Sequence record: OP380604.1
DNA length: 64,000 nucleotides
Reading direction: 5' to 3' (one strand)
Positions 723-52,230 of the stretch are shown here, one piece after another. The notes under the pieces are model-generated. The model ran no database searches, was not told the origin of the DNA, and was given only the letters and a program-made list of their open reading frames with translations. Within the stretch, counting starts at the first letter, position 1. Each line of letters starts with the position of its first letter. Made by a program: the position numbers and the translations under genes.

Positions 723-797
723 GTGCCGGTAGCCAAGTGGTAAGGCAAGTGATTGCAAATCACTTTATCGTCTGTTCAAATCAGATCCGGTACTCCA
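723..797 (+). tRNA. tRNA-Cys(GCA)
   Basis: GTGCCGG/CCGGTAC, loop TTGCAAA, U73, CCA. Confidence 0.93.
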
Positions 798-813: not shown

Positions 814-909
814 ATGTTGATTAAATCGATTTTAAAGATGTATACTGATAACTGTTGGCGTTGTGGTTATTACGGCAGTAAATGCATTTGTGATAGTCCA
901 TACGCTTGA
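814..909 (+). CDS. 31-aa CxxC...CxC micropeptide (MLIKSILKMYTDNCWRCGYYGSKCICDSPYA)
   Basis: Read manually; GAGGG RBS at 803-807; four Cys in zinc-ribbon-like spacing. Confidence 0.45.
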   Translation: MLIKSILKMYTDNCWRCGYYGSKCICDSPYA

Positions 910-933: not shown

Positions 934-1359
934 ATGAGCTTACCTAGTTATGCGCTGTTCATGAAGAACGGCGATTGTGTTGGGTCATGCTTTATCAACT
1001 GCGGTTGGTGGCATGATGAACCTCGCACACTGAAACAAATAATTCGTTATACCGAAACCGATGAATGTCCTATTGACTATGATAGCGTAATCGCGTATGG
1101 TGTTACGTATAGCAATGACTTAGAATTCGAGCTTCTGAAAGCAGAAGAAACGGAAGCTAAGTTAAAAGAGATCGCTGAAAATAAGCGTAAGCAAAGTTGG
1201 GAAGATTTACATCAGAAGATGATCGAACGGATGAAACCGATTGATCGAATGCTTCCTGAATTGATTGCTGCTGAAATATACGGAGTTCAGCCAATGAATG
1301 AACATGTTCCTAACGTTTTTTCGTTGAAGGTAGTTTACGGCGATGATATTTCTTGCTAA
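934..1359 (+). CDS. Hypothetical protein whose C-terminus resembles the T4 gp23 major capsid segment containing the Gol peptide
   Basis: RMLPELIAAEIYGVQPMNEHVPNVFSLKVVYG vs gp23 RAIPNLIAFDICGVQPMNSPTGQVFALRAVYG. Confidence 0.75.
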   Translation: MSLPSYALFMKNGDCVGSCFINCGWWHDEPRTLKQIIRYTETDECPIDYDSVIAYGVTYSNDLEFELLKAEETEAKLKEIAENKRKQSWEDLHQKMIERMKPIDRMLPELIAAEIYGVQPMNEHVPNVFSLKVVYGDDISC

Positions 1360-1543
1360 GATACGTTATATGAAAAGCGAATACATGGGTTCATCTAAAT
1401 CATTCGATACCATTAAACTGGTAGAAGCAGAAGATGCAGACGAGGCCGATAGCAAAGTTCGCGAATATTACAACGACAAAAGTTCAGATTATGGCACATA
1501 TTATTCTGTGCTGGATGTTTCGATTGAAGAACCGATTAGGTGA
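1343..1543 (+). CDS. Hypothetical protein
   Basis: 66-aa ORF tiling with neighbours. Confidence 0.65.
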   Translation: MIFLAKIRYMKSEYMGSSKSFDTIKLVEAEDADEADSKVREYYNDKSSDYGTYYSVLDVSIEEPIR

Positions 1544-1546
1544 ATT

Positions 1547-1735
1547 ATGAGTAAAGAAATTCGAATGAGGTTTACATTAAAAGAACTGAAACAAATGATT
1601 GAACTTGCGGAAACCAATAACACAACTCTCGTTGATGTTGGTTATACCCCGGGTAGTATCAGTTCTATGGTTAGAGCTAAACCTGTTGTTAAAGATGCCG
1701 AATTCGTAGACATTACCGATTACGATAGTTGGTAA
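1547..1735 (+). CDS. Hypothetical protein
   Basis: 62-aa ORF, AGGTG RBS. Confidence 0.7.
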   Translation: MSKEIRMRFTLKELKQMIELAETNNTTLVDVGYTPGSISSMVRAKPVVKDAEFVDITDYDSW

Positions 1736-1745
1736 AAATAATTAT

Positions 1746-1816
1746 AGGGGCGTAGCAAATCGGTTATGCGGCGGATTCCAAATCCGTTGAGGTGGGTTCG
1801 ACTCCTACCGCCCCTG
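1746..1816 (+). tRNA. tRNA-Trp(CCA), CCA end not encoded
   Basis: AGGGGCG/CGCCCCT, loop TTCCAAA, T loop TTCGACT. Confidence 0.9.
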
Positions 1817-1825
1817 CAAAATAAC

Positions 1826-3835: not shown

Positions 3836-3911
3836 AGGGGATTCGCCTAGTTGGCCCAAGGCACCGGGTTTGATCCCGGTATCACAAGTTCGAATCTTGT
3901 ATCCCCCGCCA
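3836..3911 (+). tRNA. tRNA-Gln(UUG)-like with 6-nt anticodon loop
   Basis: AGGGGAT/ATCCCCC, CCGGG-TTTGAT-CCCGG, T loop TTCGAAT, GCCA. Confidence 0.75.
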
Positions 3912-4712: not shown

Positions 4713-5441
4713 ATGGAGAACGTTATGGCTACTCATAGAAAACCGGAACAAATAGAAACTACCGATCTTTGTAAATATGGATGCGGAAATATCGCAAAAT
4801 ATAAAAGTGTTGGTGGGAATCTGATGTGTGAATGTTCGTCAAATAAATGTCCGGTTAATATAAAAAAGAATTCAGAAAAACTAAAAGCACTATATGATTC
4901 TGGTATGAGAAAATCCGGAGCGGAGCTGTATAAATCTCTTAGCCACGACATCAAAACTAGAATGTCGTGGAGTAAAGGATTAACAAAAGAAACCAATTCC
5001 GAACTGGAGAGACCAACTTTGGTTGGTAAACGGTTTGGTGCATCATTGTACGGCCACACAGAAGAATCAAAGCGCAAGATTTCCATAGCCAGAACGGAGT
5101 GGCTAAAGAAGACTGAAAACCGAACGAATCTTGGAAGATTCAAAAAGTCTTGGATGGAAGAAACATTTGAATCGTATCTAAATGAAAATAAAATTACGGG
5201 TTGGATAGCAGAGAAACACTTCTACTCTCCTGTTACAAAGAAAAATTATTATGTTGACTTTCTCTTTCAAGAAAAGATGCTTATATTAGAATTGGATGGA
5301 ACCCAACATAGAAAGTCTATAGAACATGATAAACAAAGAGACTTGTGGTTCAATAGTATTGGATACAAAGTTATAAGAGTTCCGGTTGACGAATTCAAAC
5401 GGAGATTTTTCTCCGGGGTTGGGTTTATCGATCTACTGTAA
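4713..5441 (+). CDS. Free-standing homing-type endonuclease: Cys-rich N-terminus, NUMOD3-like motif, DUF559/Vsr-like PD-(D/E)XK domain
   Basis: CKYGCG..CECSSNKCP; GHTEESKRKISIAR; YVDFLFQEKMLILELDGTQH..DKQRDLWFNSIGYKVIRV. Confidence 0.82.
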   Translation: MENVMATHRKPEQIETTDLCKYGCGNIAKYKSVGGNLMCECSSNKCPVNIKKNSEKLKALYDSGMRKSGAELYKSLSHDIKTRMSWSKGLTKETNSELERPTLVGKRFGASLYGHTEESKRKISIARTEWLKKTENRTNLGRFKKSWMEETFESYLNENKITGWIAEKHFYSPVTKKNYYVDFLFQEKMLILELDGTQHRKSIEHDKQRDLWFNSIGYKVIRVPVDEFKRRFFSGVGFIDLL

Positions 5442-9555: not shown

Positions 9556-10155
9556 ATGGCGAAACTTTTTTTCACGCATAGTGCGATGAACGTGGGCAAG
9601 AGCACTCAATTACTGCAAGTGGCTTTCAACTACAACGAGAGAAATCAAAACGTTCTGCTGTACAAACCTGCGTTTGACACTAGAACAGAAGGTACGATTG
9701 GATCACGTATCGGTATCCAGCGTGAGTGTCGCTGTGTGCATGTTGACGAAAACATGTTTACAATGATCGAAAAAGAGAGTAAACTGTCCGATATCGCCTG
9801 TGTTCTTGTTGATGAAGCACAGTTCCTGACTGAAAAACAAGTGTGGGAACTGTCCGACGTTGTTGACAAGCTGGATATCCCTGTTATGTGCTACGGACTG
9901 CGTACCGATTTTCTCGGTAACTTGTTCCCTGGCTCTAGGGCATTACTTTCGATTTCAGATGAAATTAGACAACTGTCTGGTATCTGTGATTGTGGTAGAA
10001 AATCCTGTATGGTAGCTCGCGTTGATGATAACGGCAATGTTATCCGTCGAGGTGAACAAATTTGCATTGGGGCTGAACAACGTTACATTTCGTTCTGCCG
10101 CAAGTGCTGGAAAAACAAACTGTCCTATGATTGGGACAAATTCAAACAAACCTGA
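9556..10155 (+). CDS. tk: Thymidine kinase (type II)
   Basis: HSAMNVGKSTQLL P-loop, LVDEAQFL, CYGLRTDF, CDCG and CRKC zinc motifs. Confidence 0.97.
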   Translation: MAKLFFTHSAMNVGKSTQLLQVAFNYNERNQNVLLYKPAFDTRTEGTIGSRIGIQRECRCVHVDENMFTMIEKESKLSDIACVLVDEAQFLTEKQVWELSDVVDKLDIPVMCYGLRTDFLGNLFPGSRALLSISDEIRQLSGICDCGRKSCMVARVDDNGNVIRRGEQICIGAEQRYISFCRKCWKNKLSYDWDKFKQT

Positions 10156-10168
10156 AAGAGGTAATTCT

Positions 10169-11605
10169 GTGTCTAATTTTATGAATGCAATGGTACAAGC
10201 TCAAGCCCGCACTGCTAACGGTGCTGTCACTAACTACACCACTGGCGACAAGTGTCTGAATCTGTTTTCTCAGATTGGTTCCTCTCGCGGGAAAGATCTG
10301 ACCCAGATGTTTGTTGATGCTTATACCGAGTCTCCTGACTGGGCTGTTCGCATTCTGCAATGGGCTCGCGATATTCGCGGTGGTGCCGGTGAACGTGAAC
10401 AATTCATCCGCCTGCTGAAAGTCCTTGCGCATCGTCACCCTGTTGACGCCACCGTAGTTCTGATGAACACTCCTGAAATCGGTCGCTTCAAAGACGTGGT
10501 AGCAATGTTCAATTCTCCGATTCAGGACGCTGCTGTGGCTATCATGGTTGATGCAATCATGACCAAGCAAAACGGTCTTGCTGCAAAGTGGGCACCTCGG
10601 AAGGGCAAAGAAGCCGGTATTCTGGCCAAAGCTATGCGAATGACTGCTAAAGAATATCGTCACACTATCGTCCGTATGTCGAACACCGTTGAACAAAAGA
10701 TGTGTGCTCGTCAGTGGGACGGTATTGAGTTCGGTAAACTGCCGTCTGTTGCATCTGCTCGATATCAGAAAGCATTCCTGAAAAACGCGAACGAGCGTTA
10801 TGTTGCTTATCTTGAGTCTCTGAAAAAGGGTGAGGCTAAGATCAACGCTGCTGCGGTTTATCCGTATGACATGATCAAATCCCTGCGTACCGGTTCTTCT
10901 GTTGCTGCTGATGCACAATGGAAAGCACAACGCGACTGGATGGCTGGCTCCACTGAAAACGTAATCGCGATGGTTGACGTTTCTGGCTCTATGGGCACTC
11001 CGACCGCTGTTGCTGGCTTGTCTGCTATGGACATCGCGATTTCTCTGGGTCTGTACATCGGCGAACGCTCGCGCGGTGTGTTCAAGAACGAAGTGATTAC
11101 CTTCGATGATAATCCTGAGTTCTACAACATCAAAGCGAAAGGCGACGATCTGCAAAGCATGGTGAATCATCTGGGACGCGCTCCGTGGGGTGGCTCTACC
11201 AACTTTGCTGGTGCATTCAAGATCATTCTTGATCGCGCTGTACGCAATCGAGTTCCGCAAGAAGATATGCCGACTATGATGGTTGTCTTGTCTGACATGG
11301 AATTCAACGTTGCTGATGGTGGCTATAGTGGTTACTATCGTATGCGTGACCGTGAGCCTACCAACTTTGAGGTGATTCGTCAGACTTACCGCGACGCTGG
11401 TTACGAAATGCCGAAACTGGTGTTCTGGAATCTTTGCCCGCGTCCGACTAACAATCCGGTGACCAAAGATGATCAAGGCACTGCTCTTGTTTCTGGTTTT
11501 AGTCCCGCAATCATGGAGACAATCCTGAGTGCGAAAGAGTTTAACCCGATGCAAATCATGCTCGACAAGATCATGAGCGACCGTTACGTCGGTATCGACT
11601 TCTAA
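10169..11605 (+). CDS. DUF2828/UCP015417 helical (TROVE-like) domain plus vWA domain protein
   Basis: RDIRGGAGER, KWAPR, VEQKMCA..W..I.F.KLPS, VDVSGSM MIDAS, GSTNF, VLSDMEF, LVFWNL; GTG start with GAGG RBS. Confidence 0.88.
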   Translation: MSNFMNAMVQAQARTANGAVTNYTTGDKCLNLFSQIGSSRGKDLTQMFVDAYTESPDWAVRILQWARDIRGGAGEREQFIRLLKVLAHRHPVDATVVLMNTPEIGRFKDVVAMFNSPIQDAAVAIMVDAIMTKQNGLAAKWAPRKGKEAGILAKAMRMTAKEYRHTIVRMSNTVEQKMCARQWDGIEFGKLPSVASARYQKAFLKNANERYVAYLESLKKGEAKINAAAVYPYDMIKSLRTGSSVAADAQWKAQRDWMAGSTENVIAMVDVSGSMGTPTAVAGLSAMDIAISLGLYIGERSRGVFKNEVITFDDNPEFYNIKAKGDDLQSMVNHLGRAPWGGSTNFAGAFKIILDRAVRNRVPQEDMPTMMVVLSDMEFNVADGGYSGYYRMRDREPTNFEVIRQTYRDAGYEMPKLVFWNLCPRPTNNPVTKDDQGTALVSGFSPAIMETILSAKEFNPMQIMLDKIMSDRYVGIDF

Positions 11606-20963: not shown

Positions 20964-23900
20964 ATGTTAACAACCAAACAATTATTCGAACGTCAAGAAG
21001 AAGAGGAATACCAACGCTTCTTGGCAGAAAATACCATGTATGATGCCGCAAGCAAGGCAACATTTGTTGATGATGAAACCGCGATCATGAATGCTTTCAT
21101 GTTCAACTTCATCGGTATTCTTGGTAGTTTCAATGCCGCTCGCCAGATGAATCACCTGTCTAGCCTGCGCAAGTATGAGCGTTATTTCAAGAGTGACGGC
21201 CAGTTGATGTTAAAGAATATCGGAGACGATAACCATAACATTTCTCTGGTGTTGAAACTCATGGCTGATAAGAAAATGTTTATCAGTGACGCTAAGGTAA
21301 GCGAAATGACCCGCTTCCTAGTTAAGTGTAAAGCTGGTGTTATTAATACCGTTGATGATGATATCGTCCGTGGTTGGGTAGCAAACATCAAATCTACCGC
21401 GCTGATGAACTTGCATCCTAAGCTCCGTGAGCTGATGAATAAGTTCAAGACCGGAGCTATTAGTCTGATCGACACTTCCAAAGAGTTGCGTCGAGTCTTG
21501 AAGAAATTCCCAGAAGCGGGTGAAGATTTGTGGACAGTTAGTATGTATGTTAAGTATGCGCGCCTTGCTGGTGTAAATACCGTAACTGTCGGTACTGCTG
21601 CTGGTGCAGGTGTTACATCGAATGTAGGTGACGATGATGACGACGACAAGAACGATAACGTGGCACAAGTCCACGCTTCTCCTGACGTCAATGACGTTAC
21701 CGATGATGCTGCTCCGAGCGTCCAGGACGAGCCTGTAGCTGTTCCTGTTCAGCCAGACTATCTGACATATGATCATGAAGCGGGATTGCTCCAATTCATT
21801 TCCAGTCAGATTGAAAAGTGCGTTGATTCTGATACCGGTCTGAGAGGATTACAGGCAATGTCACAGTTGGCTTATCCTACTGTTAGCAATCAAGGACATA
21901 TGGTAACTGGATTCGAGTTTGATCTTACCGACGAAGAACAAGTTGAAATCCATAACAAGTGGCGCCAACGTTATGTGTACACTGTTACCCAGTTGACTGA
22001 AATCGGAAAACGAATCGCTGCATTCCTGTTTATGGATAATTCCACGGGTGTATACGCAATCGAAGAAGCGTTGGAATTGAAAAACGTTGAGTTTCTACGC
22101 AACAACATTTCATTCTTCCGTGGGCTAAAAGAAAAGTACGGCATTCTTGGCAATCAAATTCCGTATTCTGCTTATCAGACTATGGCAATGACTTTTGGCA
22201 ATATTAAGTCTGACCCAACTTGCTGGCTATTCGGATTTAATACTACCGACGTTGCTCTTGAGATTACAAGCGGAAAACTAGGCAAAGCCATGCTTGATCA
22301 TTACAAGGGAAACAACGGCGATAGTATCGTAATTGGTATTCTGGGATACATGCGTGAAATGTCTCCTACTATCCGTCAGATGTATTTCAATTGCCTGTTG
22401 GAAGTAATTTCAACTGCTTATGTCTATATGATGTCCTATTCTAGCTATCTATCGGATGCTTTCAAATCTCTGTTGTTTGACGGCTCATTTGCTGATATGA
22501 TTGGTTGGGATACAGTAACGAGTTACGTGCTGGAAAGATACAAGCAAGTATATCCTCCGTATAAATGGGATTCTTGGAACGCAAATAGCAAAGTTTCGCT
22601 GTGTCGTCATGGACTTGAGTTTCTTTTGACTCCCGCGAATAAAGCTAACGCCGATTTCTCTTTCATCAACGATCATTGGACTAAACTGTACGCACTCGAT
22701 GACGCGGATTTCGTTGATACAATCAAGCGAGTAAAAGACTCTTATAAGGGTTCCGTTGAATATCCACTAGAAAACATGGACGCGGCAGATGTTTCTATGA
22801 TTGCTAAGTGCGTTATTCGTGCTCTTGAACTTGGTATTATTTTCCCGAATCGTGTTAATGCTATGGCTTATAACATGGTACCGAGCATGAAGCAGCGAGT
22901 TAGAGACGCATTGGATGCATATATCACAAAAGATACCAGCGTGGGTTCTTCTTGGGAAGAACAAGAAAACGCTTTGATGTCCGCTGCTTTCATTCATGGC
23001 GAAAGCGACGTTGCTGCTGGTGCTGAATATGTTATCAATAAAATCAAGGGAACTCCAAACGCGGGTGCTAAGACTCGAATTTTCTTTATGTCGAATCGTG
23101 GTACAATGCCTGAATACAGACAAAAGATTTTCCTTGGTGGATACAGAGCACTAGGCAAAGATCTGGACATTTACGATCTTGGCATCAATAAAAACAGTAA
23201 GTATGATAATCTTTACTCCGCTTTCCTGAAATATTATGATTTTGAGGGAGAAGACGCGGTAGAATTCATGAAGCTTGAAGTTAAGAACGGATTTAAGTTC
23301 TTTAACGCCGAGAACGGTAAATCTATCAGTGTTCGTGATCATAAGCAAGGTATGCAACAAGCATTGGTAGACATTATGACTGACGCCGTAGAAACTGATC
23401 CTGCTATCACGGACATTTTCTTCGATAACTTGGAAACATATTATCGTGGTAAAGTGCGAGATCAATTGGCTGCAATCAAGTTTGTTTACGGACAAGTTCT
23501 TGAGGGTCCAATTAACTTGTTCGACAAGTTGGATCGTCGTCGTGTTAAGCAGATGTTTGAGTTTAACGAAATTAACCCAACTGAGTTGGTGAAACAAGCG
23601 AAGATCAAACTCGGCAAGAATGAGAAGTTCACCGATTATATCAAGCGTGTGGAAGCCGAAGCTGCGAAGGGTGACGGTGTTGTTCCAAAAGTTAAAGCAG
23701 TTGACGACAATATTACCAACGAACAGAAATACCTGATTGGTAAGCATTTGATCGATAACTATTACGCTGGTAAACACGGTAACGTTTATCCTCTAATTCT
23801 GCGTAGTATGACCGTGAGTTTCCCAGACGGTGAATTCAAAAAGTTCATGCAAGAACAGATCGACGCTGGTAAACTTGAACAAGTCGTTCCATGTTTCCAC

Positions 23901-24602
23901 GGAACCGGTGGTATCGCTGCTAACATGATCTTGCGTTACGGCTTCAAGATTATTCCTAGCAAGGATTCATCTGTTGTTGGACGTATGCTTGGTGACGGGA
24001 TTTACTTTAGTAACAAGATTGATAAGATCTTGCAATACGTTGGTAACTCCGGTTATGGACGTCAAGCTGGTACCCGTGGGTATGTTTTCGAAATGGAATC
24101 TATTCTGGGTCAGCCTATCAAGGATTATCGTTCTGCTGGTGTGCCTAATGCAACATCAAAATCAAACGTAATCAGTCCAGAATGGGCAGTGTTTAGTCCA
24201 GAAAAACAACTGCGAATTCTAAAATGCTATGAGGTTGAACTGAATCGATACGACAAGTTCAAAGCATATCAAGAGAAAATGAAGGGAACATTGGAAGAAA
24301 GTAAAACAATGAAGTTCGGTGAACTACTTACCGAAGCCAAGCGTTCCGGTGTTCAAGATTATATCGTGTATTCTTTCCGAGGCGGCGAATTGCCGAGATT
24401 GAAGAACGGACGTCTTGAGTACGTGGAACCCAAGAAAGTCGATTTCCCTTCTGGGATCAAAATCGAAGGTGGCAACGAGGATGACGGATACGTTCGTGTC
24501 TATATCCCAGCCAAGCGCACAGAGTACCGCGAGTATTCAGCGTGTAAGAAGCTGAAAGGCAAAGAGTTGAAAGACTATCTGAAACTCACCGAACAGCTAT
24601 AA
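20964..24602 (+). CDS. Large Alt-like, probably virion-packaged protein with C-terminal PARP-type (H-Y-E) ADP-ribosyltransferase domain
   Basis: FHGTG..ILRYGF (His 23898), GRMLGDGIYFS (Tyr 24003), SPEWAVF (Glu 24180); acidic linker. Confidence 0.8.
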   Translation: MLTTKQLFERQEEEEYQRFLAENTMYDAASKATFVDDETAIMNAFMFNFIGILGSFNAARQMNHLSSLRKYERYFKSDGQLMLKNIGDDNHNISLVLKLMADKKMFISDAKVSEMTRFLVKCKAGVINTVDDDIVRGWVANIKSTALMNLHPKLRELMNKFKTGAISLIDTSKELRRVLKKFPEAGEDLWTVSMYVKYARLAGVNTVTVGTAAGAGVTSNVGDDDDDDKNDNVAQVHASPDVNDVTDDAAPSVQDEPVAVPVQPDYLTYDHEAGLLQFISSQIEKCVDSDTGLRGLQAMSQLAYPTVSNQGHMVTGFEFDLTDEEQVEIHNKWRQRYVYTVTQLTEIGKRIAAFLFMDNSTGVYAIEEALELKNVEFLRNNISFFRGLKEKYGILGNQIPYSAYQTMAMTFGNIKSDPTCWLFGFNTTDVALEITSGKLGKAMLDHYKGNNGDSIVIGILGYMREMSPTIRQMYFNCLLEVISTAYVYMMSYSSYLSDAFKSLLFDGSFADMIGWDTVTSYVLERYKQVYPPYKWDSWNANSKVSLCRHGLEFLLTPANKANADFSFINDHWTKLYALDDADFVDTIKRVKDSYKGSVEYPLENMDAADVSMIAKCVIRALELGIIFPNRVNAMAYNMVPSMKQRVRDALDAYITKDTSVGSSWEEQENALMSAAFIHGESDVAAGAEYVINKIKGTPNAGAKTRIFFMSNRGTMPEYRQKIFLGGYRALGKDLDIYDLGINKNSKYDNLYSAFLKYYDFEGEDAVEFMKLEVKNGFKFFNAENGKSISVRDHKQGMQQALVDIMTDAVETDPAITDIFFDNLETYYRGKVRDQLAAIKFVYGQVLEGPINLFDKLDRRRVKQMFEFNEINPTELVKQAKIKLGKNEKFTDYIKRVEAEAAKGDGVVPKVKAVDDNITNEQKYLIGKHLIDNYYAGKHGNVYPLILRSMTVSFPDGEFKKFMQEQIDAGKLEQVVPCFHGTGGIAANMILRYGFKIIPSKDSSVVGRMLGDGIYFSNKIDKILQYVGNSGYGRQAGTRGYVFEMESILGQPIKDYRSAGVPNATSKSNVISPEWAVFSPEKQLRILKCYEVELNRYDKFKAYQEKMKGTLEESKTMKFGELLTEAKRSGVQDYIVYSFRGGELPRLKNGRLEYVEPKKVDFPSGIKIEGGNEDDGYVRVYIPAKRTEYREYSACKKLKGKELKDYLKLTEQL

Positions 24603-29537: not shown

Positions 29538-29662
29538 TAACGTGAAGGGGTAGAAAATACCCCTCACAAAAAGCTTGTTTTGTGTCTAAAGATATGAGAC
29601 AATCTTTTTGTGATAAGAAATCACAAACAAAACACAATCAATCAATGAAGGGAGCCTTCAAA

Positions 29663-31108
29663 ATGAACGTATTTAAATCTAACCTGTGTACTTCCACCGA
29701 CTCTTACAAAATCACTCATCCATGGCAGTTCCCACAAGGCACTGACGCCGCGAGTTTCTATGCTGAACCCCGCGTCGATGATAACGTGATGTTGTCTGGT
29801 CTTCACTTTGTTGCGCGTGTCTTGGAGCAAGGCATTACCGTCGCTGACGTAACTCGCGCTAACATGCTTTACAAATCACATTTCGGTCGCGATGTATTCG
29901 CCTATGACATGTGGATGAAAATTGCAACTGAACGTGGTGGTAAGCTGCCGGTTAATATGTACGGTGTAAAAGACGGACAAGTTATCCCAGGTCGCAATGC
30001 AACTATGGTTGTTGAAACTTTCGGTCCTGAATTCAGCATTGGTGGGCATCTGGAAACTTTCCTGTTGCGTGGTCACTGGTATCCGAGTTCTGTTGCCACT
30101 CTGAGTTTCAAAATCAAGAAGCTTTGCAAAAAGTATCTTAAAGAAACCTCAGATCTGGAAGGTGCTGATTTTGACTTTGTTCTGAAAACTCGCCTGCACG
30201 ATTTTGGTGCTCGCGGCGCGACTTGCGAACAAGCAGCAAAACTGGGTGGCCTGGCGCACCTGATCAACTTTATCGGTACCGATACCGTTGAAGCTCTGAT
30301 TCTGGCACAAGATATCTACAATCTTGCCCATGATATCGCTGTTGGTATCAGTATTCCGGCGCGTGAGCATAGCACTACCATCTGCTACGGCGATGAAGGT
30401 ATTCTGACTCCCGAACAGGAAGATGAAGCATTCTGGAACAGCATTCGTCAATGGGGTGACGGTGTTTATGCTGTAGTTGCCGATTCTATTGACTACAAAT
30501 CTGCCGTTGATCGTCTGACTACCGGTGAATTCAAGCGTGAGATTCTAGCGCGTGGCGGTACTTGCGTGATTCGTCCTGACTCCGGTGACATGTTCGATAA
30601 TATCGGCTATGCTCTGGAGACTATCTCGAAAAACGTTGGTTTCACTGTGAATAGCAAAGGCTATAAAGTTCTGCATGGTAGCTACCGAGTAATCCAAGGT
30701 GACGGTCTGAGTTCTGATAAGGATATCGAAGCCTGCTTGAAGTTCATCAAAGAACTGGGTTATAGTGTTGAAAACGTTGCTTTCGGTATGGGTGGTGGTC
30801 TGTTGCAGAAGTGCGACCGTGACACTCAGAAGTGGGCTTACAAATGCTCTGCGATTCGCGTAAACGGTAAATGGCGTGGTGTTCGTAAGAACCCGAAAGA
30901 TGCAGCATGGAAAGCTTCTAAAGCTGGTCGTATGCGTCTTGTCAAGATCGACGGTGAATATAAGACTGTCAACGTACTGGACCCGCGATTTGCACAGTAT
31001 GAACACAGTAACGAATATGTTACTTATCTCATGGACGGTGTTTGCGCTCATAGCTACACCAAATCACTGTTTGATGAAGCTCGCGCACGTTCTGACGAAC
31101 AAGCGTAA
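29663..31108 (+). CDS. nadV: Nicotinamide phosphoribosyltransferase
   Basis: TDSYKITH, LHDFGARG, SIPAREHST, IRPDSGD, VIQGDG, FGMGGGLLQKCDRDTQKWAYK. Confidence 0.93.
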   Translation: MNVFKSNLCTSTDSYKITHPWQFPQGTDAASFYAEPRVDDNVMLSGLHFVARVLEQGITVADVTRANMLYKSHFGRDVFAYDMWMKIATERGGKLPVNMYGVKDGQVIPGRNATMVVETFGPEFSIGGHLETFLLRGHWYPSSVATLSFKIKKLCKKYLKETSDLEGADFDFVLKTRLHDFGARGATCEQAAKLGGLAHLINFIGTDTVEALILAQDIYNLAHDIAVGISIPAREHSTTICYGDEGILTPEQEDEAFWNSIRQWGDGVYAVVADSIDYKSAVDRLTTGEFKREILARGGTCVIRPDSGDMFDNIGYALETISKNVGFTVNSKGYKVLHGSYRVIQGDGLSSDKDIEACLKFIKELGYSVENVAFGMGGGLLQKCDRDTQKWAYKCSAIRVNGKWRGVRKNPKDAAWKASKAGRMRLVKIDGEYKTVNVLDPRFAQYEHSNEYVTYLMDGVCAHSYTKSLFDEARARSDEQA

Positions 31109-48869: not shown

Positions 48870-50069
48870 ATGCGCAAACAAGTAGAAAAAACAAGAGACT
48901 TAGATGGCAATTTGATTTATCGCAATGAGCGATATGCCAACGAAGATAATCCATGGGACCACTGGCAGCAAATGCCACACTATGAGCCGAAAGATATCAT
49001 CGACGCTTATGCCGAGATTGAATTCGAGTTCGATAATAACGATGATGTTGCCGAGTTTTCTAAGCTCGCAGACTTGCCGTTAAGCGACAAGACAAAGAGC
49101 ATTTGGTGGCCGAAGAAGGGACCAGACGATTACTCCGTGATTCGTTATGTATCCGATTACACCGATTTGAATCAACCAAAATATCCGATTTACATCGTAT
49201 CGAAATCCCGTTGGGAAAAGCGATTGACATCCGATAGCTTGGTGCGTATGAAAGTCAAGCATTATATCGTTGTAGAAGAGTCTCAATTCGAAGAATATAA
49301 CAGCCGCGTTGATCATGAATACGTGACTGTTATTATTCTTGATCAGAAATACCTTGACGAATACGATACTTTTGATAATCTCGGTAACACTCGGAGCAAA
49401 GGTCCAGGCGCTGCTCGCAACTTTGCTTGGGAACACTCTATGAAAATGGGGTTCAAGCGTCACTGGGTAATGGACGATAACCAGCAGCACTTCTTCCGTC
49501 TTGACGGAAACAAGCGTATAATCGTTAATAGCGGTGCAATCTTCCGTGCCATGGAAGACCACGTTGATCGTTATGAAAACGTCTATATCGCTGGTCCACA
49601 TTATCGATTCTTTGCTGTACCGAAAGAGTCACTGCCACCGTTTGTTCAAAACTGTCGGATTTATAGCACTCTGCTTATTCTGAACGATATTCCATATCGT
49701 TGGAGAGGTCGCTACAACGAAGATACCGATTTGAGCCTGCGTGTTCTGAAAGACGGCCATTGCACGATTCAATATAACGCTTTCCTGACTGGCAAGCTTG
49801 TGACTCAAGCTATGGCAGGTGGCAACACCGAAGCGTTCTATTCAAAAGAAGGCACTCTGCCTAAGTCGCAAATGATCGTGGACATGCATCCAGACGTCGC
49901 CAGATTGCAGTGGATGAACGGTCGCTGGCACCACTGGGTAGACTATGCGCCTTATCGTTCTAATCGTCTGAAACTGAAAAATGTTATTCCAGAAGGTTGC
50001 AATGAATACGGAATGATGCTAACATCTATCAAAGCGTCCGAACAAGACGCCAACGACGAGGAAGAATAA
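48870..50069 (+). CDS. TAGT/GREB1-like (GT-A fold) glycosyltransferase, probable DNA-base modifier
   Basis: YPIYIVSKSRW, YIVVEESQ, AARNFAWEHS, HWVMDDN, WRGRYNEDTDLSLRVLKDG, GGNT, RWHHWVDY. Confidence 0.82.
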   Translation: MRKQVEKTRDLDGNLIYRNERYANEDNPWDHWQQMPHYEPKDIIDAYAEIEFEFDNNDDVAEFSKLADLPLSDKTKSIWWPKKGPDDYSVIRYVSDYTDLNQPKYPIYIVSKSRWEKRLTSDSLVRMKVKHYIVVEESQFEEYNSRVDHEYVTVIILDQKYLDEYDTFDNLGNTRSKGPGAARNFAWEHSMKMGFKRHWVMDDNQQHFFRLDGNKRIIVNSGAIFRAMEDHVDRYENVYIAGPHYRFFAVPKESLPPFVQNCRIYSTLLILNDIPYRWRGRYNEDTDLSLRVLKDGHCTIQYNAFLTGKLVTQAMAGGNTEAFYSKEGTLPKSQMIVDMHPDVARLQWMNGRWHHWVDYAPYRSNRLKLKNVIPEGCNEYGMMLTSIKASEQDANDEEE

Positions 50070-50269
50070 TGGCATATGTTAACCCAGATGCCGCACCGGA
50101 ACACGTAATCGAGAAAATGAAAAGTGGCAAACGGACGATTAAAGTCCGTTTTGCTTCCAAAGAAAAGTTCGATGCGTTTGTTAAACAAACCGGATTGGCA
50201 ATTGACAAAAACACCAAACATGTGAAGTTCCCACAACATCCTGGACTTGCATCATTGTTTGACATTTGA
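50069..50269 (+). CDS. 66-aa protein resembling the N-terminal domain of the TAGT gene; ends ASLFDI
   Basis: IKVRFASKEKFDAFVKQTGLAIDKNTKHVKFP vs IEFEFDNNDDVAEFSKLADLPLSDKTKSIWWP. Confidence 0.72.
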   Translation: MAYVNPDAAPEHVIEKMKSGKRTIKVRFASKEKFDAFVKQTGLAIDKNTKHVKFPQHPGLASLFDI

Positions 50270-50297
50270 GGGCTTCGGCCCTCTTATAGGAGATATC

Positions 50298-50993
50298 ATG
50301 AACGAAAAACGGAAGCTAGTTGCTCGCAATCAGTGGTACAAATTTCTGAATATTGCTTGCGAAACTCACACTAAGCCAGCTGGTACCAAAGTCGAAATCG
50401 ACTCTATGAAGTTCCGCAAAAACATCAGACTCTATACAGAAAATATGATTGGCTCTAAGGTGTATAACAAAGCACATTTGAACGAACTGTTCGGTGCGTA
50501 TATTGTTGACAATCGAATCCCAGAGTTGATTGGTGTCAATGTAACGAAACTTGGCGAAGGCATAGTTGTTAACATCGTTGAGTTTGAATTCAGTCGTGGT
50601 AGTCAATCTATCATAGATGAAATGTTCATCAAAATGAAAGAATTCTCTCCGTTCGCTGCAAAGCGTACCGAATATGGATTCAAAATGAACGTTCGTATTC
50701 CTGAACGCAAAATCGATCTGCTACAAAAAGCTCCTAAGCAACAGAAACCGGAGATCATTGCTAAAGTGGAAAAAGATATAAAAGAAGTTTCTACCGATAT
50801 ATTGAAACTCCAAATCAAACAATTGGAAGCTGAGATCAAGCGCCGACATATCATAGAACTCGATGCAATGATGAATGATTACATCGTGGAACGTGATAAG
50901 CTGGTAAAAATGAACATCGCTATTATGAAGATAGCAAAAGAATACGGCATGGATCGCGAGTATGGAGAACGTCTGAGCACTCATGCACTTTGA
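50298..50993 (+). CDS. Hypothetical protein with C-terminal coiled coil
   Basis: AGGAG RBS, ATG 50298; MNEKRKLV like MKEGRKLV of 47150 ORF. Confidence 0.75.
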   Translation: MNEKRKLVARNQWYKFLNIACETHTKPAGTKVEIDSMKFRKNIRLYTENMIGSKVYNKAHLNELFGAYIVDNRIPELIGVNVTKLGEGIVVNIVEFEFSRGSQSIIDEMFIKMKEFSPFAAKRTEYGFKMNVRIPERKIDLLQKAPKQQKPEIIAKVEKDIKEVSTDILKLQIKQLEAEIKRRHIIELDAMMNDYIVERDKLVKMNIAIMKIAKEYGMDREYGERLSTHAL

Positions 50994-52230
50994 TTATATG
51001 ATTGCAAACCCGCCATATAGTGCGGGTTTGCACGTTGACTTTGTTAACTTAGGTGTAAAGAAATGTGATGTTACTATCGCTGTGCATCCGTCTGGACCTT
51101 TTATTAACAGAAAGCCAACGCGACAAACAAAACGAGTTGCCGAACTACTCGACAACATGAAAACATATACAACAAGTGTTCATCTGTTTGACGGCAATGC
51201 GGTATTCAAAGCTGGGTTTCTGACTCCGCTTAGTATAACCGTTATTGACAAAACAATGAAAGCTGGTCTGATTAATGTGTCGGGCTACTATGATGCTAGA
51301 CTGCCTATCAATCGTCTGAATATGATTGGAGATTGGTGTGTTAAACTGTATGACAGATTTCCAATGCAGTCTATAGCGCACCATGCCTGCTCTGGTGAAG
51401 TTATTGGCGCGAGTCACTACGTCACTATAGCAAGTGTTAGAGGACATCCGCCAGAAGCTGGCAAACGCTTTAATTCAGACTTCTTTACCATGTTCCCAGT
51501 TGACTACGTTCCAACTACAGAAATGCCTAAACGTGGCACTAATTTCGCATTCAAGACGTTAGAAGAAGCAGAGAATTTTATTGCGTATCTGAAAACGGAT
51601 TTCGCAAGATTTATGCTTTCTCTGTATAAGATGAATGTTCACCTAGATAGTGGCGAGCTACATGCAATTCCATGGGTAGACATGACTAAGCGTTGGACAG
51701 ATGACGAGCTATTCGAAAAATTCGATATGCTTGATATCAGATCTAGGGTTCCAGAAGTAATCGAAGATTACTATGGCGGTAAGCGCCACAAAACGCAAGT
51801 CGTTGGTGATACCAGGATGTTTACCGATAAGATTGATAGAGATCGTCAGAAGAAAACTGCCGAGTTTTTCACTCCGATTGAACTCGTAAATCAGATGTTG
51901 GATCATACCGACATAGATGATCCGGATTCCAGTTCGACTTTCTTTGAGCCCTCATGCGGTGACGGTAACATACTAGAAGGCATCGTGAAACGTATGCTGG
52001 AAGCGGGCCAGAACGCTGGTACAATCGTTTCTCGTATATACGCTTGTGAGTATATGCTGGACAATAGAAACGCTGCCATAGAGCGATTGGCGAAGCTTTT
52101 GGGAGAGGAATACCGAACTCAAATTGAAAATCAAATCGCTTATTGCAACACATTAGACGAGACTGACACCAGCGACGGTAGAAAGTATCCAGATTGGCTT
52201 AAAGATACGAAGTGGACGCTTGACATATGA
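50983..52230 (+). CDS. Amino-DNA methyltransferase with catalytic-TRD-AdoMet (permuted) motif order
   Basis: FDYMIANPPY at N-terminus (51007); TAEFFTP and FFEPSCGDGN (51943) near C-terminus. Confidence 0.85.
   Translation: MHFDYMIANPPYSAGLHVDFVNLGVKKCDVTIAVHPSGPFINRKPTRQTKRVAELLDNMKTYTTSVHLFDGNAVFKAGFLTPLSITVIDKTMKAGLINVSGYYDARLPINRLNMIGDWCVKLYDRFPMQSIAHHACSGEVIGASHYVTIASVRGHPPEAGKRFNSDFFTMFPVDYVPTTEMPKRGTNFAFKTLEEAENFIAYLKTDFARFMLSLYKMNVHLDSGELHAIPWVDMTKRWTDDELFEKFDMLDIRSRVPEVIEDYYGGKRHKTQVVGDTRMFTDKIDRDRQKKTAEFFTPIELVNQMLDHTDIDDPDSSSTFFEPSCGDGNILEGIVKRMLEAGQNAGTIVSRIYACEYMLDNRNAAIERLAKLLGEEYRTQIENQIAYCNTLDETDTSDGRKYPDWLKDTKWTLDI

What the first reader, a model, noticed from the sequence alone, without database searches (positions are those of the whole stretch)
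1246..1341. Small ORF in the tRNA array ends with a copy of the major-capsid Gol-peptide segment
Seen: residues ~105-136 of the 141-aa ORF 934-1359 read RMLPELIAAEIYGVQPMNEHVPNVFSLKVVYG. Known: T4 gp23 has RRAIPNLIAFDICGVQPMNSPTGQVFALRAVYG (18 identities over 32 aligned residues by eye). That segment overlaps the Gol peptide, which binds EF-Tu and triggers the Lit protease abortive-infection system; capsid proteins are also ligands of other defence sensors. The rest of the ORF does not look like a capsid protein. Inference: a stand-alone capsid-epitope mimic that could act as a decoy or competitive inhibitor of capsid-sensing immunity, or as an EF-Tu-binding translation modulator, consistent with its position among tRNA genes.
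Basis: partly seen in the sequence, partly recalled or inferred. Interest (0 to 1): 0.72.

Follow-up and report, generated by a model that had tools for sequence, protein, structure and literature searches.

The report
Small phage protein carrying capsid peptide
A small, conserved non-structural gene of a T4-like Aeromonas phage ends in a true but ancient relative of the major-capsid-protein segment that binds EF-Tu and triggers the Lit defence; databases mislabel it "major head protein", and its function, possibly a decoy, is untested.

Summary
ORF 934-1359 (+, 141 aa) is real and under purifying selection. Its residues 97-138 are homologous to T4 gp23 residues 91-135 (profile-profile probability 98.3%, E 1.9e-14). 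The rest is not capsid-like: a small beta-beta-alpha-beta-beta domain with no match among solved structures, then a 38-residue charged helix, then the gp23-like stretch as a low-confidence tail.

The window is Aeromonas phage avDM12-TAAL. The ORF belongs to a family (PHROG 12830) found in T4-like phages of Aeromonas, Vibrio and Citrobacter and in metagenomes: 60 representative proteins, 45 of them with the motif. RefSeq and PHROGs wrongly call it "major head protein".

The segment is not a recent copy of the resident capsid gene (17/37 identities). The same motif also occurs in complete small ORFs with unrelated N-termini, so it behaves as a portable peptide module. All these genes lie among early or accessory genes, often but not always in tRNA arrays, and never in the head module.

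Best reading (confidence about 0.35, inferred): a docking peptide that occupies the partner of this gp23 segment. The only documented partner is EF-Tu, with the Lit protease acting on that complex. The protein would then act as a decoy or competitor. No tool could test binding.

The parts
934..1359 (+). Complete ORF, 141 aa plus stop; member of PHROG 12830; hypothetical protein UYD60226.1 in OP380604.1
   Evidence: dN/dS over the whole ORF is 0.15-0.43 against five relatives
934..1119 (+). N-terminal domain, residues 1-62: strands 5-11, 14-21, 51-54 and 57-60, helix 29-40. No known fold or function. The first residues are almost invariant in the family
   Evidence: AlphaFold2 block pLDDT 86-97; no PDB fold match, best E 0.68. 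M1, S2, P4, G24 and Y55 are invariant in 60 members. This domain also occurs alone in about 15 of the 60 representatives
1120..1233 (+). Long helix, residues 63-100; 18 of 38 residues charged; likely a spacer or an oligomerisation helix
   Evidence: helix 63-100, pLDDT 96-98; family median length 38, charged fraction 0.38
1222..1347 (+). gp23-like segment, residues 97-138, homologous to T4 gp23 91-135; predicted as a mostly unstructured tail
   Evidence: block pLDDT 45-79
1255..1296 (+). Conserved core of the motif, residues P108-M121, equivalent to T4 gp23 104-117. Some family members end 3-4 residues after it
   Evidence: family shares: P108 0.87, A112 0.84, I115 0.82, V118 0.89, Q119 0.91, P120 0.96, M121 0.78
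817..846 (+). Sigma-70-like promoter match upstream of the ORF (9 of 12 positions); consensus match only
   Evidence: the number of such matches in the region is not above shuffles
1343..1543 (+). Downstream 66-aa ORF overlapping the stop region; syntenic in Aeromonas relatives (Aeh1p186); no family assignment
1547..1735 (+). Second downstream small ORF (62 aa); completes the three-ORF block between two tRNA genes
723..797 (+). tRNA-Cys, upstream boundary of the three-ORF block
1746..1817 (+). tRNA-Trp, downstream boundary of the three-ORF block

Best explanation
SHOWN. The gene encodes a three-part accessory protein: an orphan N-terminal domain, a long charged helix, and a flexible C-terminal tail. 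The tail is an ancient homologue of gp23 residues about 91-135. This gp23 region is the end of the N-arm plus the first ordered residues, and it is disordered or exposed in unassembled gp23. The core of the tail is conserved across the family at exactly the residues gp23 keeps. The motif also occurs in other small ORFs with unrelated N-termini. The genes lie among early or accessory genes.

INFERRED. The tail is a portable docking peptide that occupies the site of whatever cellular factor recognises this linear segment of nascent gp23. The only partner documented to bind the segment as an isolated peptide is EF-Tu (domains II-III). Lit-type proteases then act on that complex.

The most likely role is therefore a mimic expressed apart from the head genes. 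It would engage EF-Tu and/or a sensor of the gp23-EF-Tu complex non-productively, with the helix and N-domain supplying bulk or a second activity. The effect would be to blunt capsid-triggered abortive infection. Whether the outcome is decoying a sensor, shielding EF-Tu or tuning translation is not resolved.
For: - Homology of the tail to gp23 91-135, and to nothing else in gp23.
- Seven core positions are kept at 0.78-0.96 across 45 motif-bearing members, all identical to the gp23 residue. By contrast, gp23 residues that are 95-100% conserved in gp23 itself (F109, G97, Y131, G132) are not kept, and F109 is never kept. This pattern suggests a shared ligand rather than the capsid fold.
- The vertex paralogue gp24 has the same fold, yet lacks the P..LIA and terminal M residues that gp23 and this family share.
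- The tail is predicted flexible, after a rigid helix.
- The motif is portable. P0069 (128 aa) shares only residues 79-122 with the family, and P0053 (71 aa) and P0066 (92 aa) are complete minimal ORFs with unrelated neighbours.
- Some members stop 3-4 residues after the core.
- There is purifying selection, including on the motif.
- The gene is on the strand opposite the head genes, with no T4-type late promoter box in the 64-kb window. The three such boxes in the phage's late region all lie on the late-gene strand; one sits directly upstream of g24.
- The family lies in early or accessory regions in all loci examined.
- Literature: the Gol region works as a 29-residue peptide, binds EF-Tu domains II-III and enables Lit cleavage (PMC3014915). 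In the unexpanded head, gp23 66-105 is disordered and L106 is the first residue built (PMC9546572). Capsid proteins and EF-Tu recur in immune sensing (bioRxiv 10.64898/2026.01.04.697583). Phage tRNA arrays act as counter-defence loci (PMC13096335).
Against: - No binding or expression data exist, and no tool here co-folds two chains.
- I could not verify the exact Gol residue bounds or the critical residues.
- The free Gol peptide is reported to activate Lit, so a mimic could be harmful unless it binds non-productively.
- EF-Tu is very abundant, so simple competition for it seems inefficient (my own reasoning).
- In my 43-sequence gp23 sample, segment 98-134 is conserved (mean top-residue share 0.845) but ranks only 139 of 485 windows. 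Its conservation in gp23 is therefore not exceptional.
- The N-domain also exists without the motif, so the motif may be an add-on to an unrelated function.
- No conserved neighbour gene points to a defence link.
- Early timing rests only on strand, context and the absence of a late-promoter box.
- Whether hosts of these phages carry Lit-type proteases was not examined.
Confidence: 0.35

Rival explanations
1. Head-assembly accessory. The tail mimics the gp23 N-arm and docks on a prohead partner (scaffold core, portal whiskers or a neighbouring capsomer). It would either modulate assembly or carry the N-domain into the head as cargo.
For: The gp23 segment lies at the N-arm/P-domain junction. 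The N-terminal region probably contacts the scaffolding core, and M98 contacts the portal whisker (PMC9546572). Databases label the family 'major head protein'.
Against: The gene is never in the head module, lies on the opposite strand and has no late-promoter box nearby. The family is absent from most T4-like genomes: of 1321 phage records matched, only 25 cover at least 80% of the protein. The database label derives only from the 35-45-residue match. The N-domain also occurs without the motif.
Confidence: 0.2
2. An EF-Tu-tethered modulator of translation, unrelated to defence. The tail anchors the helix and N-domain on EF-Tu-GDP to bias elongation or tRNA use during infection.
For: Gol binding is reported to prefer EF-Tu-GDP and to inhibit its GTPase. 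The gene recurs inside tRNA arrays in several genera.
Against: tRNA linkage is not universal (Merlin, D481, L013, L014, L020). T4-like tRNA arrays hold many unrelated small ORFs. The N-domain shows no resemblance to any translation factor.
Confidence: 0.15
3. An exapted peptide with a new role. The gp23-derived stretch now serves as an intramolecular or oligomerisation element, or binds a partner unrelated to any gp23 partner.
For: The AlphaFold2 tail is not fully disordered (pLDDT 59-79 for residues 101-140, with a short helix at 112-114). Several residues that are invariant in gp23 have been lost.
Against: The same motif is kept in ORFs with unrelated N-termini or almost none. That is hard to reconcile with packing against this particular N-domain.
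Confidence: 0.15
4. A non-functional remnant of a partial g23 duplication, or a gene-calling artefact.
For: The ORF is short and lies in a hyperplastic region. The Shine-Dalgarno match is weak.
Against: There are 60 representative family members at 50% clustering, all starting at the same conserved N-terminus. dN/dS is 0.15-0.43. The predicted fold is confident. The motif is only 17/37 identical to the resident gp23, whereas the gp23 proteins of this phage and T4 share 31/37.
Confidence: 0.03

Closest known systems
Gol segment of T4 gp23 (EF-Tu ligand and activator of the e14 Lit protease)
   Same: Homologous sequence: window residues 97-138 align to gp23 91-135. Like the experimental Gol peptide, it is presented outside the folded capsid protein as a short, probably flexible stretch.
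   Different: Only 46-51% identical over 37 residues. It is fused to an unrelated domain and helix, and encoded away from the head genes. Several residues that are invariant in gp23 are changed. EF-Tu binding and Lit activation or inhibition are untested.
PHROG 12830 and the RefSeq 'major head protein' small ORFs (Aeh1p187, PX29 gp308, phiAS5 ORF0311, Ah1 gp328, Merlin gp284 'T4 gp23/24-like')
   Same: Full-length member: E 5.5e-60, residues 1-130 against profile positions 1-127 of 128. Synteny between tRNA-Cys and tRNA-Trp is shared with the Aeromonas relatives.
   Different: None in kind. The functional label of the family is wrong, because these proteins lack the capsid fold.
Phage anti-defence proteins that counter the sensing of a structural-protein trigger, for example DSAD1 against DSR2, which senses the tail tube (PMC11087589, abstract seen)
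   Same: In the proposed logic, a small non-structural phage protein interferes with recognition of a virion protein.
   Different: Here the candidate would be a sequence mimic of the phage's own trigger. No sensor is identified and no interaction is shown.
T4 internal proteins delivered into the head by a short targeting peptide (from my own knowledge, not tested here)
   Same: A short peptide would direct an otherwise unrelated small protein to a head-assembly partner.
   Different: Those peptides are N-terminal and unrelated to gp23. This motif is C-terminal and gp23-derived. No evidence of packaging exists.

Membership tests
Gp23/HK97-fold major capsid proteins (Pfam PF07068) | Match to the family profile over the capsid fold (A and P domains, several hundred residues) | tested here: not met
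   Only profile positions 12-46 of 376 match. The profile-profile comparison aligns 45 columns and nothing else. The protein has 141 aa, against 537 aa for the resident gp23.
Gp23/HK97-fold major capsid proteins (Pfam PF07068) | Score at or above Pfam's gathering threshold | tested here: met
   24.5 bits against a cutoff of 24.4. This is a marginal pass caused by the short motif alone, and it explains the database mislabel.
Gp23/HK97-fold major capsid proteins (Pfam PF07068) | Predicted HK97-like fold | tested here: not met
   The AlphaFold2 model is beta-beta-alpha-beta-beta plus one long helix plus a tail. No capsid protein appears among the Foldseek PDB matches.
Gp23/HK97-fold major capsid proteins (Pfam PF07068) | Encoded in the late head-gene module | tested here: not met
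   The head module lies at record positions 116-123 kb on the opposite strand. This ORF is at 168 kb, among tRNA genes.
PHROG 12830 (small 'major head protein' ORFs of T4-like phages) | Full-length profile match | tested here: met
   E 5.5e-60, residues 1-130 against profile positions 1-127 of 128. All 60 family representatives match it.
Gol peptide (Lit activator, EF-Tu ligand) | Sequence homologous to the gp23 Gol region | tested here: inconclusive
   Homology to gp23 91-135 is shown. I could not read the published residue bounds and critical residues of Gol. The review places Gol in the first quarter of gp23 with a 20-residue core, which fits.
Gol peptide (Lit activator, EF-Tu ligand) | Binds EF-Tu domains II-III | not testable with these tools
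   No two-chain structure prediction or binding data were available.
Gol peptide (Lit activator, EF-Tu ligand) | Enables Lit cleavage of EF-Tu | not testable with these tools
   This is a biochemical property. No Lit sequence could be fetched, because no tool or paper showed an accession.
Phage anti-defence decoys or mimics | Expressed before or independently of the trigger it mimics | tested here: inconclusive
   The gene is on the strand opposite the late genes, in an accessory context, with no TATAAATA in the window. There are no expression data.
Phage anti-defence decoys or mimics | Binds the immune sensor or its cofactor and blocks activation | not testable with these tools
   No sensor is identified. 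The PADLOC library was not scanned, because it holds defence proteins rather than counter-defence proteins.

The most novel reading that the evidence does not exclude
T4-like phages encode stand-alone mimics of their own capsid protein's most exposed linear segment. The segment is fused to different carrier modules and made apart from the head genes. These mimics would pre-occupy EF-Tu and/or capsid-sensing immune proteins (Lit-type proteases or other sensors that read a capsid-EF-Tu complex), so that the burst of nascent gp23 no longer triggers abortive infection. This would be self-epitope mimicry as a counter-defence.
Probability: 0.2. Interest if true: 0.85.

Novelty: new variant of a known kind. 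Interest (0 to 1): 0.6.

Why it matters
Capsid proteins are among the commonest triggers of bacterial immunity, and the gp23-EF-Tu-Lit system is the oldest example. Yet the reason T4-like phages conserve the EF-Tu-binding segment is still unknown, and I found no phage counter-measure to Lit in the literature I could search.

This family presents that segment on its own, in several architectures. It therefore offers a natural reagent for asking what the segment binds and why. Which residues the mimics keep and which they drop separates ligand-binding positions from capsid-fold positions.

There is also a practical point. Dozens of genomes carry a wrong 'major head protein' label on this gene, which can mislead capsid-based phylogeny and marker surveys.

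Tried and rejected
- **Recent duplication of the resident g23: rejected.** The motif is 17/37 aa and 65/111 nt identical to the phage's own g23. It is no closer to that than to T4 g23 (19/37), whereas the two gp23 proteins share 31/37.
- **Whole ORF as a degenerate capsid protein: rejected**.
- **PHROG 138 match extending over residues 67-138:** not reproduced by the profile-profile comparison. The extra part is probably helix composition.
- **Similarity to the vertex protein gp24:** none by BLASTP. gp24 keeps only the skeleton of the segment.
- **tRNA-array position as a family trait:** only partly true.
- **Conserved neighbour genes:** none found across genera.
- **'The segment is the most conserved part of gp23':** not reproduced in my 43-sequence sample, where it ranks 139 of 485 windows.
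- **Literature look-ups for the Gol residue bounds:** failed.
- **A census of Lit-type proteases in host genomes:** could not be started, because no tool or paper showed an accession for Lit.
- **The search for related loci:** failed with the 60-member alignment.
- **AlphaFold2 model of a gp23 94% identical to the resident one:** too poor over residues 54-170 to describe the motif in its native context.
- **NCBIfam:** nothing meaningful.

Full report
**What the window is.** The first 1.4 kb tested is 100% identical to Aeromonas phage avDM12-TAAL (OP380604.1; Straboviridae, Chrysonvirus). The window is the last 64 kb of that 231,190-bp record. It opens in a tRNA array: 19 tRNA genes by ARAGORN and 19 Rfam tRNA matches in the first 6.5 kb. 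The larger window ORFs I scanned are accessory genes with no capsid gene among them: a PARP-like giant protein, NAMPT, a TET-associated glycosyltransferase and a methylase-like protein. The head module lies elsewhere in the record and on the opposite strand. The phage's own gp23 (537 aa) and gp24 are at record positions 117.4-119.0 kb and 116.2-117.3 kb.

**The observation.** ORF 934-1359 (+) encodes 141 aa, annotated only as a hypothetical protein. Several independent tests tie this stretch to gp23:
- Pfam Gp23: E 2.2e-5, just over the gathering score, profile positions 12-46 only.
- phmmer against solved T4 gp23 chains: E 2.2e-4, precursor residues 98-134.
- BLASTP against the phage's own gp23: E 5e-9, 17/37 identities.
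- Profile-profile comparison of 60 family members with 43 gp23 sequences: probability 98.3%, E 1.9e-14, 45 columns. Window residues 97-138 align to T4 gp23 91-135, and nothing else aligns.

**Anatomy.** An AlphaFold2 model built on the 60-member alignment has mean pLDDT 86.7. It shows three parts:
- a compact N-domain with strands at 5-11, 14-21, 51-54 and 57-60 and a helix at 29-40;
- one long helix at 63-100 (pLDDT 96-98), in which 18 of 38 residues are charged;
- the gp23-like stretch as a mostly unstructured tail (block pLDDT 45-79).

Foldseek finds no solved structure (best E 0.68). In the viral library it finds only family members and a few uncharacterised N-domain-like proteins of T4-like phages such as Aeromonas phage 31 and Klebsiella phage Marfa. 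Pfam, NCBIfam and PHROGs give the N-domain no function.

**The family.** The ORF matches PHROG 12830 over its full length (E 5.5e-60). tblastn finds full-length relatives in these phages (loci):
- Aeromonas phages phiAS5 and phiWae14 (94% identity), PX29 and AsFcp_1/2 (64%), Aeh1 (62%), Ah1 (50%), AsFcp_4, ZPAH1 and Ahp1_CNU;
- Vibrio phage D479;
- Citrobacter phages Merlin, Moon, CF1, Ci1, Ursula and NM4.3.

An exhaustive profile search of 1.84 billion representative proteins returns 68 hits. Sixty begin with the same conserved N-terminus. In the tool alignment, 45 of these carry the motif region; the rest include about 15 short N-domain-only proteins of 67-105 aa. A few members are longer (259 and 292 aa). 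RefSeq calls many of these 'major head protein', the Aeh1 record notes 'similar to T4 gp23' and the Merlin record 'T4 gp23/24-like'. The similarity has therefore been seen before, but only as an annotation label, and the label is wrong.

The gene is under purifying selection. Nei-Gojobori dN/dS over the whole ORF is 0.15-0.43 in six pairwise comparisons, and 0.10-0.51 on the motif where it could be computed.

**Which residues are kept.** Across the 45 motif-bearing members the following window residues are conserved, each being the gp23 residue at the aligned position:

| Window residue | Share in the family |
|---|---|
| P108 | 0.87 |
| A112 | 0.84 |
| I115 | 0.82 |
| V118 | 0.89 |
| Q119 | 0.91 |
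| P120 | 0.96 |
| M121 | 0.78 |
| L110 | 0.56 |
| I111 | 0.64 |
| G117 | 0.60 |

In contrast, some gp23 positions that are 95-100% conserved among gp23 proteins are not kept. T4 F109 is never kept, and G97, Y131 and G132 rarely are. Several members terminate 3-4 residues after the core. The vertex paralogue gp24 shares the fold, but it keeps only a skeleton of this segment and lacks the residues that gp23 and the small family share. I infer that the shared core reflects a shared ligand rather than the needs of the capsid fold.

**Origin.** The motif is no closer to the resident gp23 (17/37 aa, 65/111 nt) than to T4 gp23 (19/37), whereas the two gp23 proteins share 31/37. This is an old capture or divergence, not a recent duplication.

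**Portability.** Some profile hits do not start with the family N-terminus. Some of them look like N-terminal pieces of divergent capsid genes, but at least three are complete small ORFs:
- P0069 (128 aa) lies inside a 34.6-kb contig among carbamoyltransferase, HAD-hydrolase and radical-SAM genes. It shares only residues 79-122 with the family.
- P0066 (92 aa) and P0053 (71 aa) consist of little more than a short leader plus the motif. The ORFs upstream of them are unrelated to the family N-domain.

The motif therefore behaves as a module attached to different carriers.

**Context and timing.** The gene is on the strand opposite the late head and tail genes. The T4-type late-promoter box TATAAATA does not occur anywhere in the 64-kb window. 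All three copies in the 50-kb late region lie on the late-gene strand; one is directly upstream of g24 and another just upstream of a small ORF next to the tail-tube gene. A sigma-70-like match lies at 817-846, but it is only a consensus hit.

Across loci the gene sits among small ORFs, nucleotide-metabolism genes or tRNA genes, and never in a head module. About 13 of 23 distinct loci are in or beside tRNA arrays: the several Aeromonas genera, D479, Ci1, S13, L015 and L032. In Merlin, Moon and CF1 the gene lies between the arn-like gene ('inhibitor of MrcBC restriction') and asiA. Loci L013, L014, L020 and the KVP40-sized contig L031 (244,834 bp) have no tRNA genes nearby. No neighbour is conserved across genera. 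Early or middle expression is thus likely but inferred.

**What is known about the gp23 segment.** The review PMC3014915 reports four points:
- a 29-residue Gol region, with a 20-residue core containing 13 important residues, is sufficient for function;
- it binds EF-Tu domains II-III, prefers EF-Tu-GDP and inhibits the GTPase;
- this binding is what allows Lit to cleave EF-Tu;
- the region is conserved in T4-related phages, which suggested to the original authors that all their gp23 proteins bind EF-Tu.

PMC9546572 reports that gp23 66-105 is disordered in the unexpanded head, that L106 is the first ordered residue, and that 132-160 is a flexible linker. It also reports that the N-terminal region probably contacts the scaffold and that M98 later contacts the portal whisker. 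From memory only, and not verified here, the Gol peptide is usually given as roughly residues 93-122 of gp23. In my own sample of 43 gp23 sequences, segment 98-134 is well conserved but is not the most conserved window.

**Mechanism.** The steps shown are homology, modular architecture, selective conservation of the core, portability and a non-head context. The steps inferred are as follows. The tail acts as a linear docking peptide for the partner of this gp23 segment. EF-Tu is the only partner known to bind the segment as a free peptide. The protein would then act as a mimic that engages EF-Tu and/or a sensor of the gp23-EF-Tu complex non-productively. I put this at about 0.35.

There are three difficulties:
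- free Gol activates Lit rather than blocking it;
- EF-Tu is too abundant for simple competition, so sequestering a scarce sensor in a dead-end complex is the more workable version;
- nothing links the hosts of these phages to Lit-type proteases, because I could not run that census.

The rivals are a head-assembly or cargo-targeting role (0.2), an EF-Tu-tethered translation modulator (0.15), an exapted peptide with an unrelated partner (0.15) and a dead remnant (0.03).

**Novelty and verdict.** The ORF family exists in databases under a wrong name. I found no paper that analyses it. Three points are new here: it is a chimeric, non-capsid protein; its gp23-derived tail is selectively conserved; and the same motif is carried by other small ORFs. 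The functional reading remains a hypothesis. I rate it a new variant of a known kind (phage mimic or decoy proteins, Gol-type peptides) with interest 0.6.

Noticed in passing
window 3836-3911 (+): A tRNA-like gene (Rfam tRNA, 47.6 bits) for which ARAGORN reports no proper anticodon. The fold shows a 6-bp anticodon stem with a 6-nt loop and an encoded CCA end. It is not annotated in the GenBank record.
   Followed up: partly
window 4713-5441 (+): A 242-aa ORF inside the tRNA array with a DUF559 (Vsr-like endonuclease) domain, E 2.3e-13. It is probably a homing-endonuclease-type gene, a class that a recent paper (PMC13096335) links to amplification of tRNA and anti-defence loci.
   Followed up: partly
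L020:4001-4387 (P0069); L019:809-1087 (P0066); L021:116-331 (P0053): Complete small ORFs from metagenome contigs that carry the same gp23-like motif with unrelated or minimal N-terminal parts. These are further architectures of the same peptide module.
   Followed up: partly
window 20964-24602 (+): A 1212-aa ORF with a weak PARP catalytic-domain match (E 2.3e-5, below Pfam's cutoff).
   Followed up: no
window 10022-11605 (+); also L015:8023-9432: A DUF2828 + DUF7788 + vWA protein. A homologous gene lies 1.5 kb downstream of a family member in an unrelated metagenome-assembled contig.
   Followed up: no
window 29582-31108 and 48870-52230 (+): A NAMPT-type NAD salvage gene. Further along are a TET-associated glycosyltransferase and a methylase-like ORF, which suggest DNA hypermodification.
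   Followed up: no
whole window; L002: The T4 late-promoter box TATAAATA is absent from the whole 64-kb window (2.7 expected by chance). The late region of the same phage has three copies, all on the late-gene strand; one is directly upstream of g24.
   Followed up: partly
L010:1501-1767 (Cronobacter phage S13); L012:1501-1746 (Vibrio phage D481); L031 (KVP40-sized contig, 244,834 bp): Versions of the family with the N-domain only (81-88 aa), lacking the gp23-like tail. At least the S13 ORF is still labelled 'major head protein' in RefSeq.
   Followed up: partly
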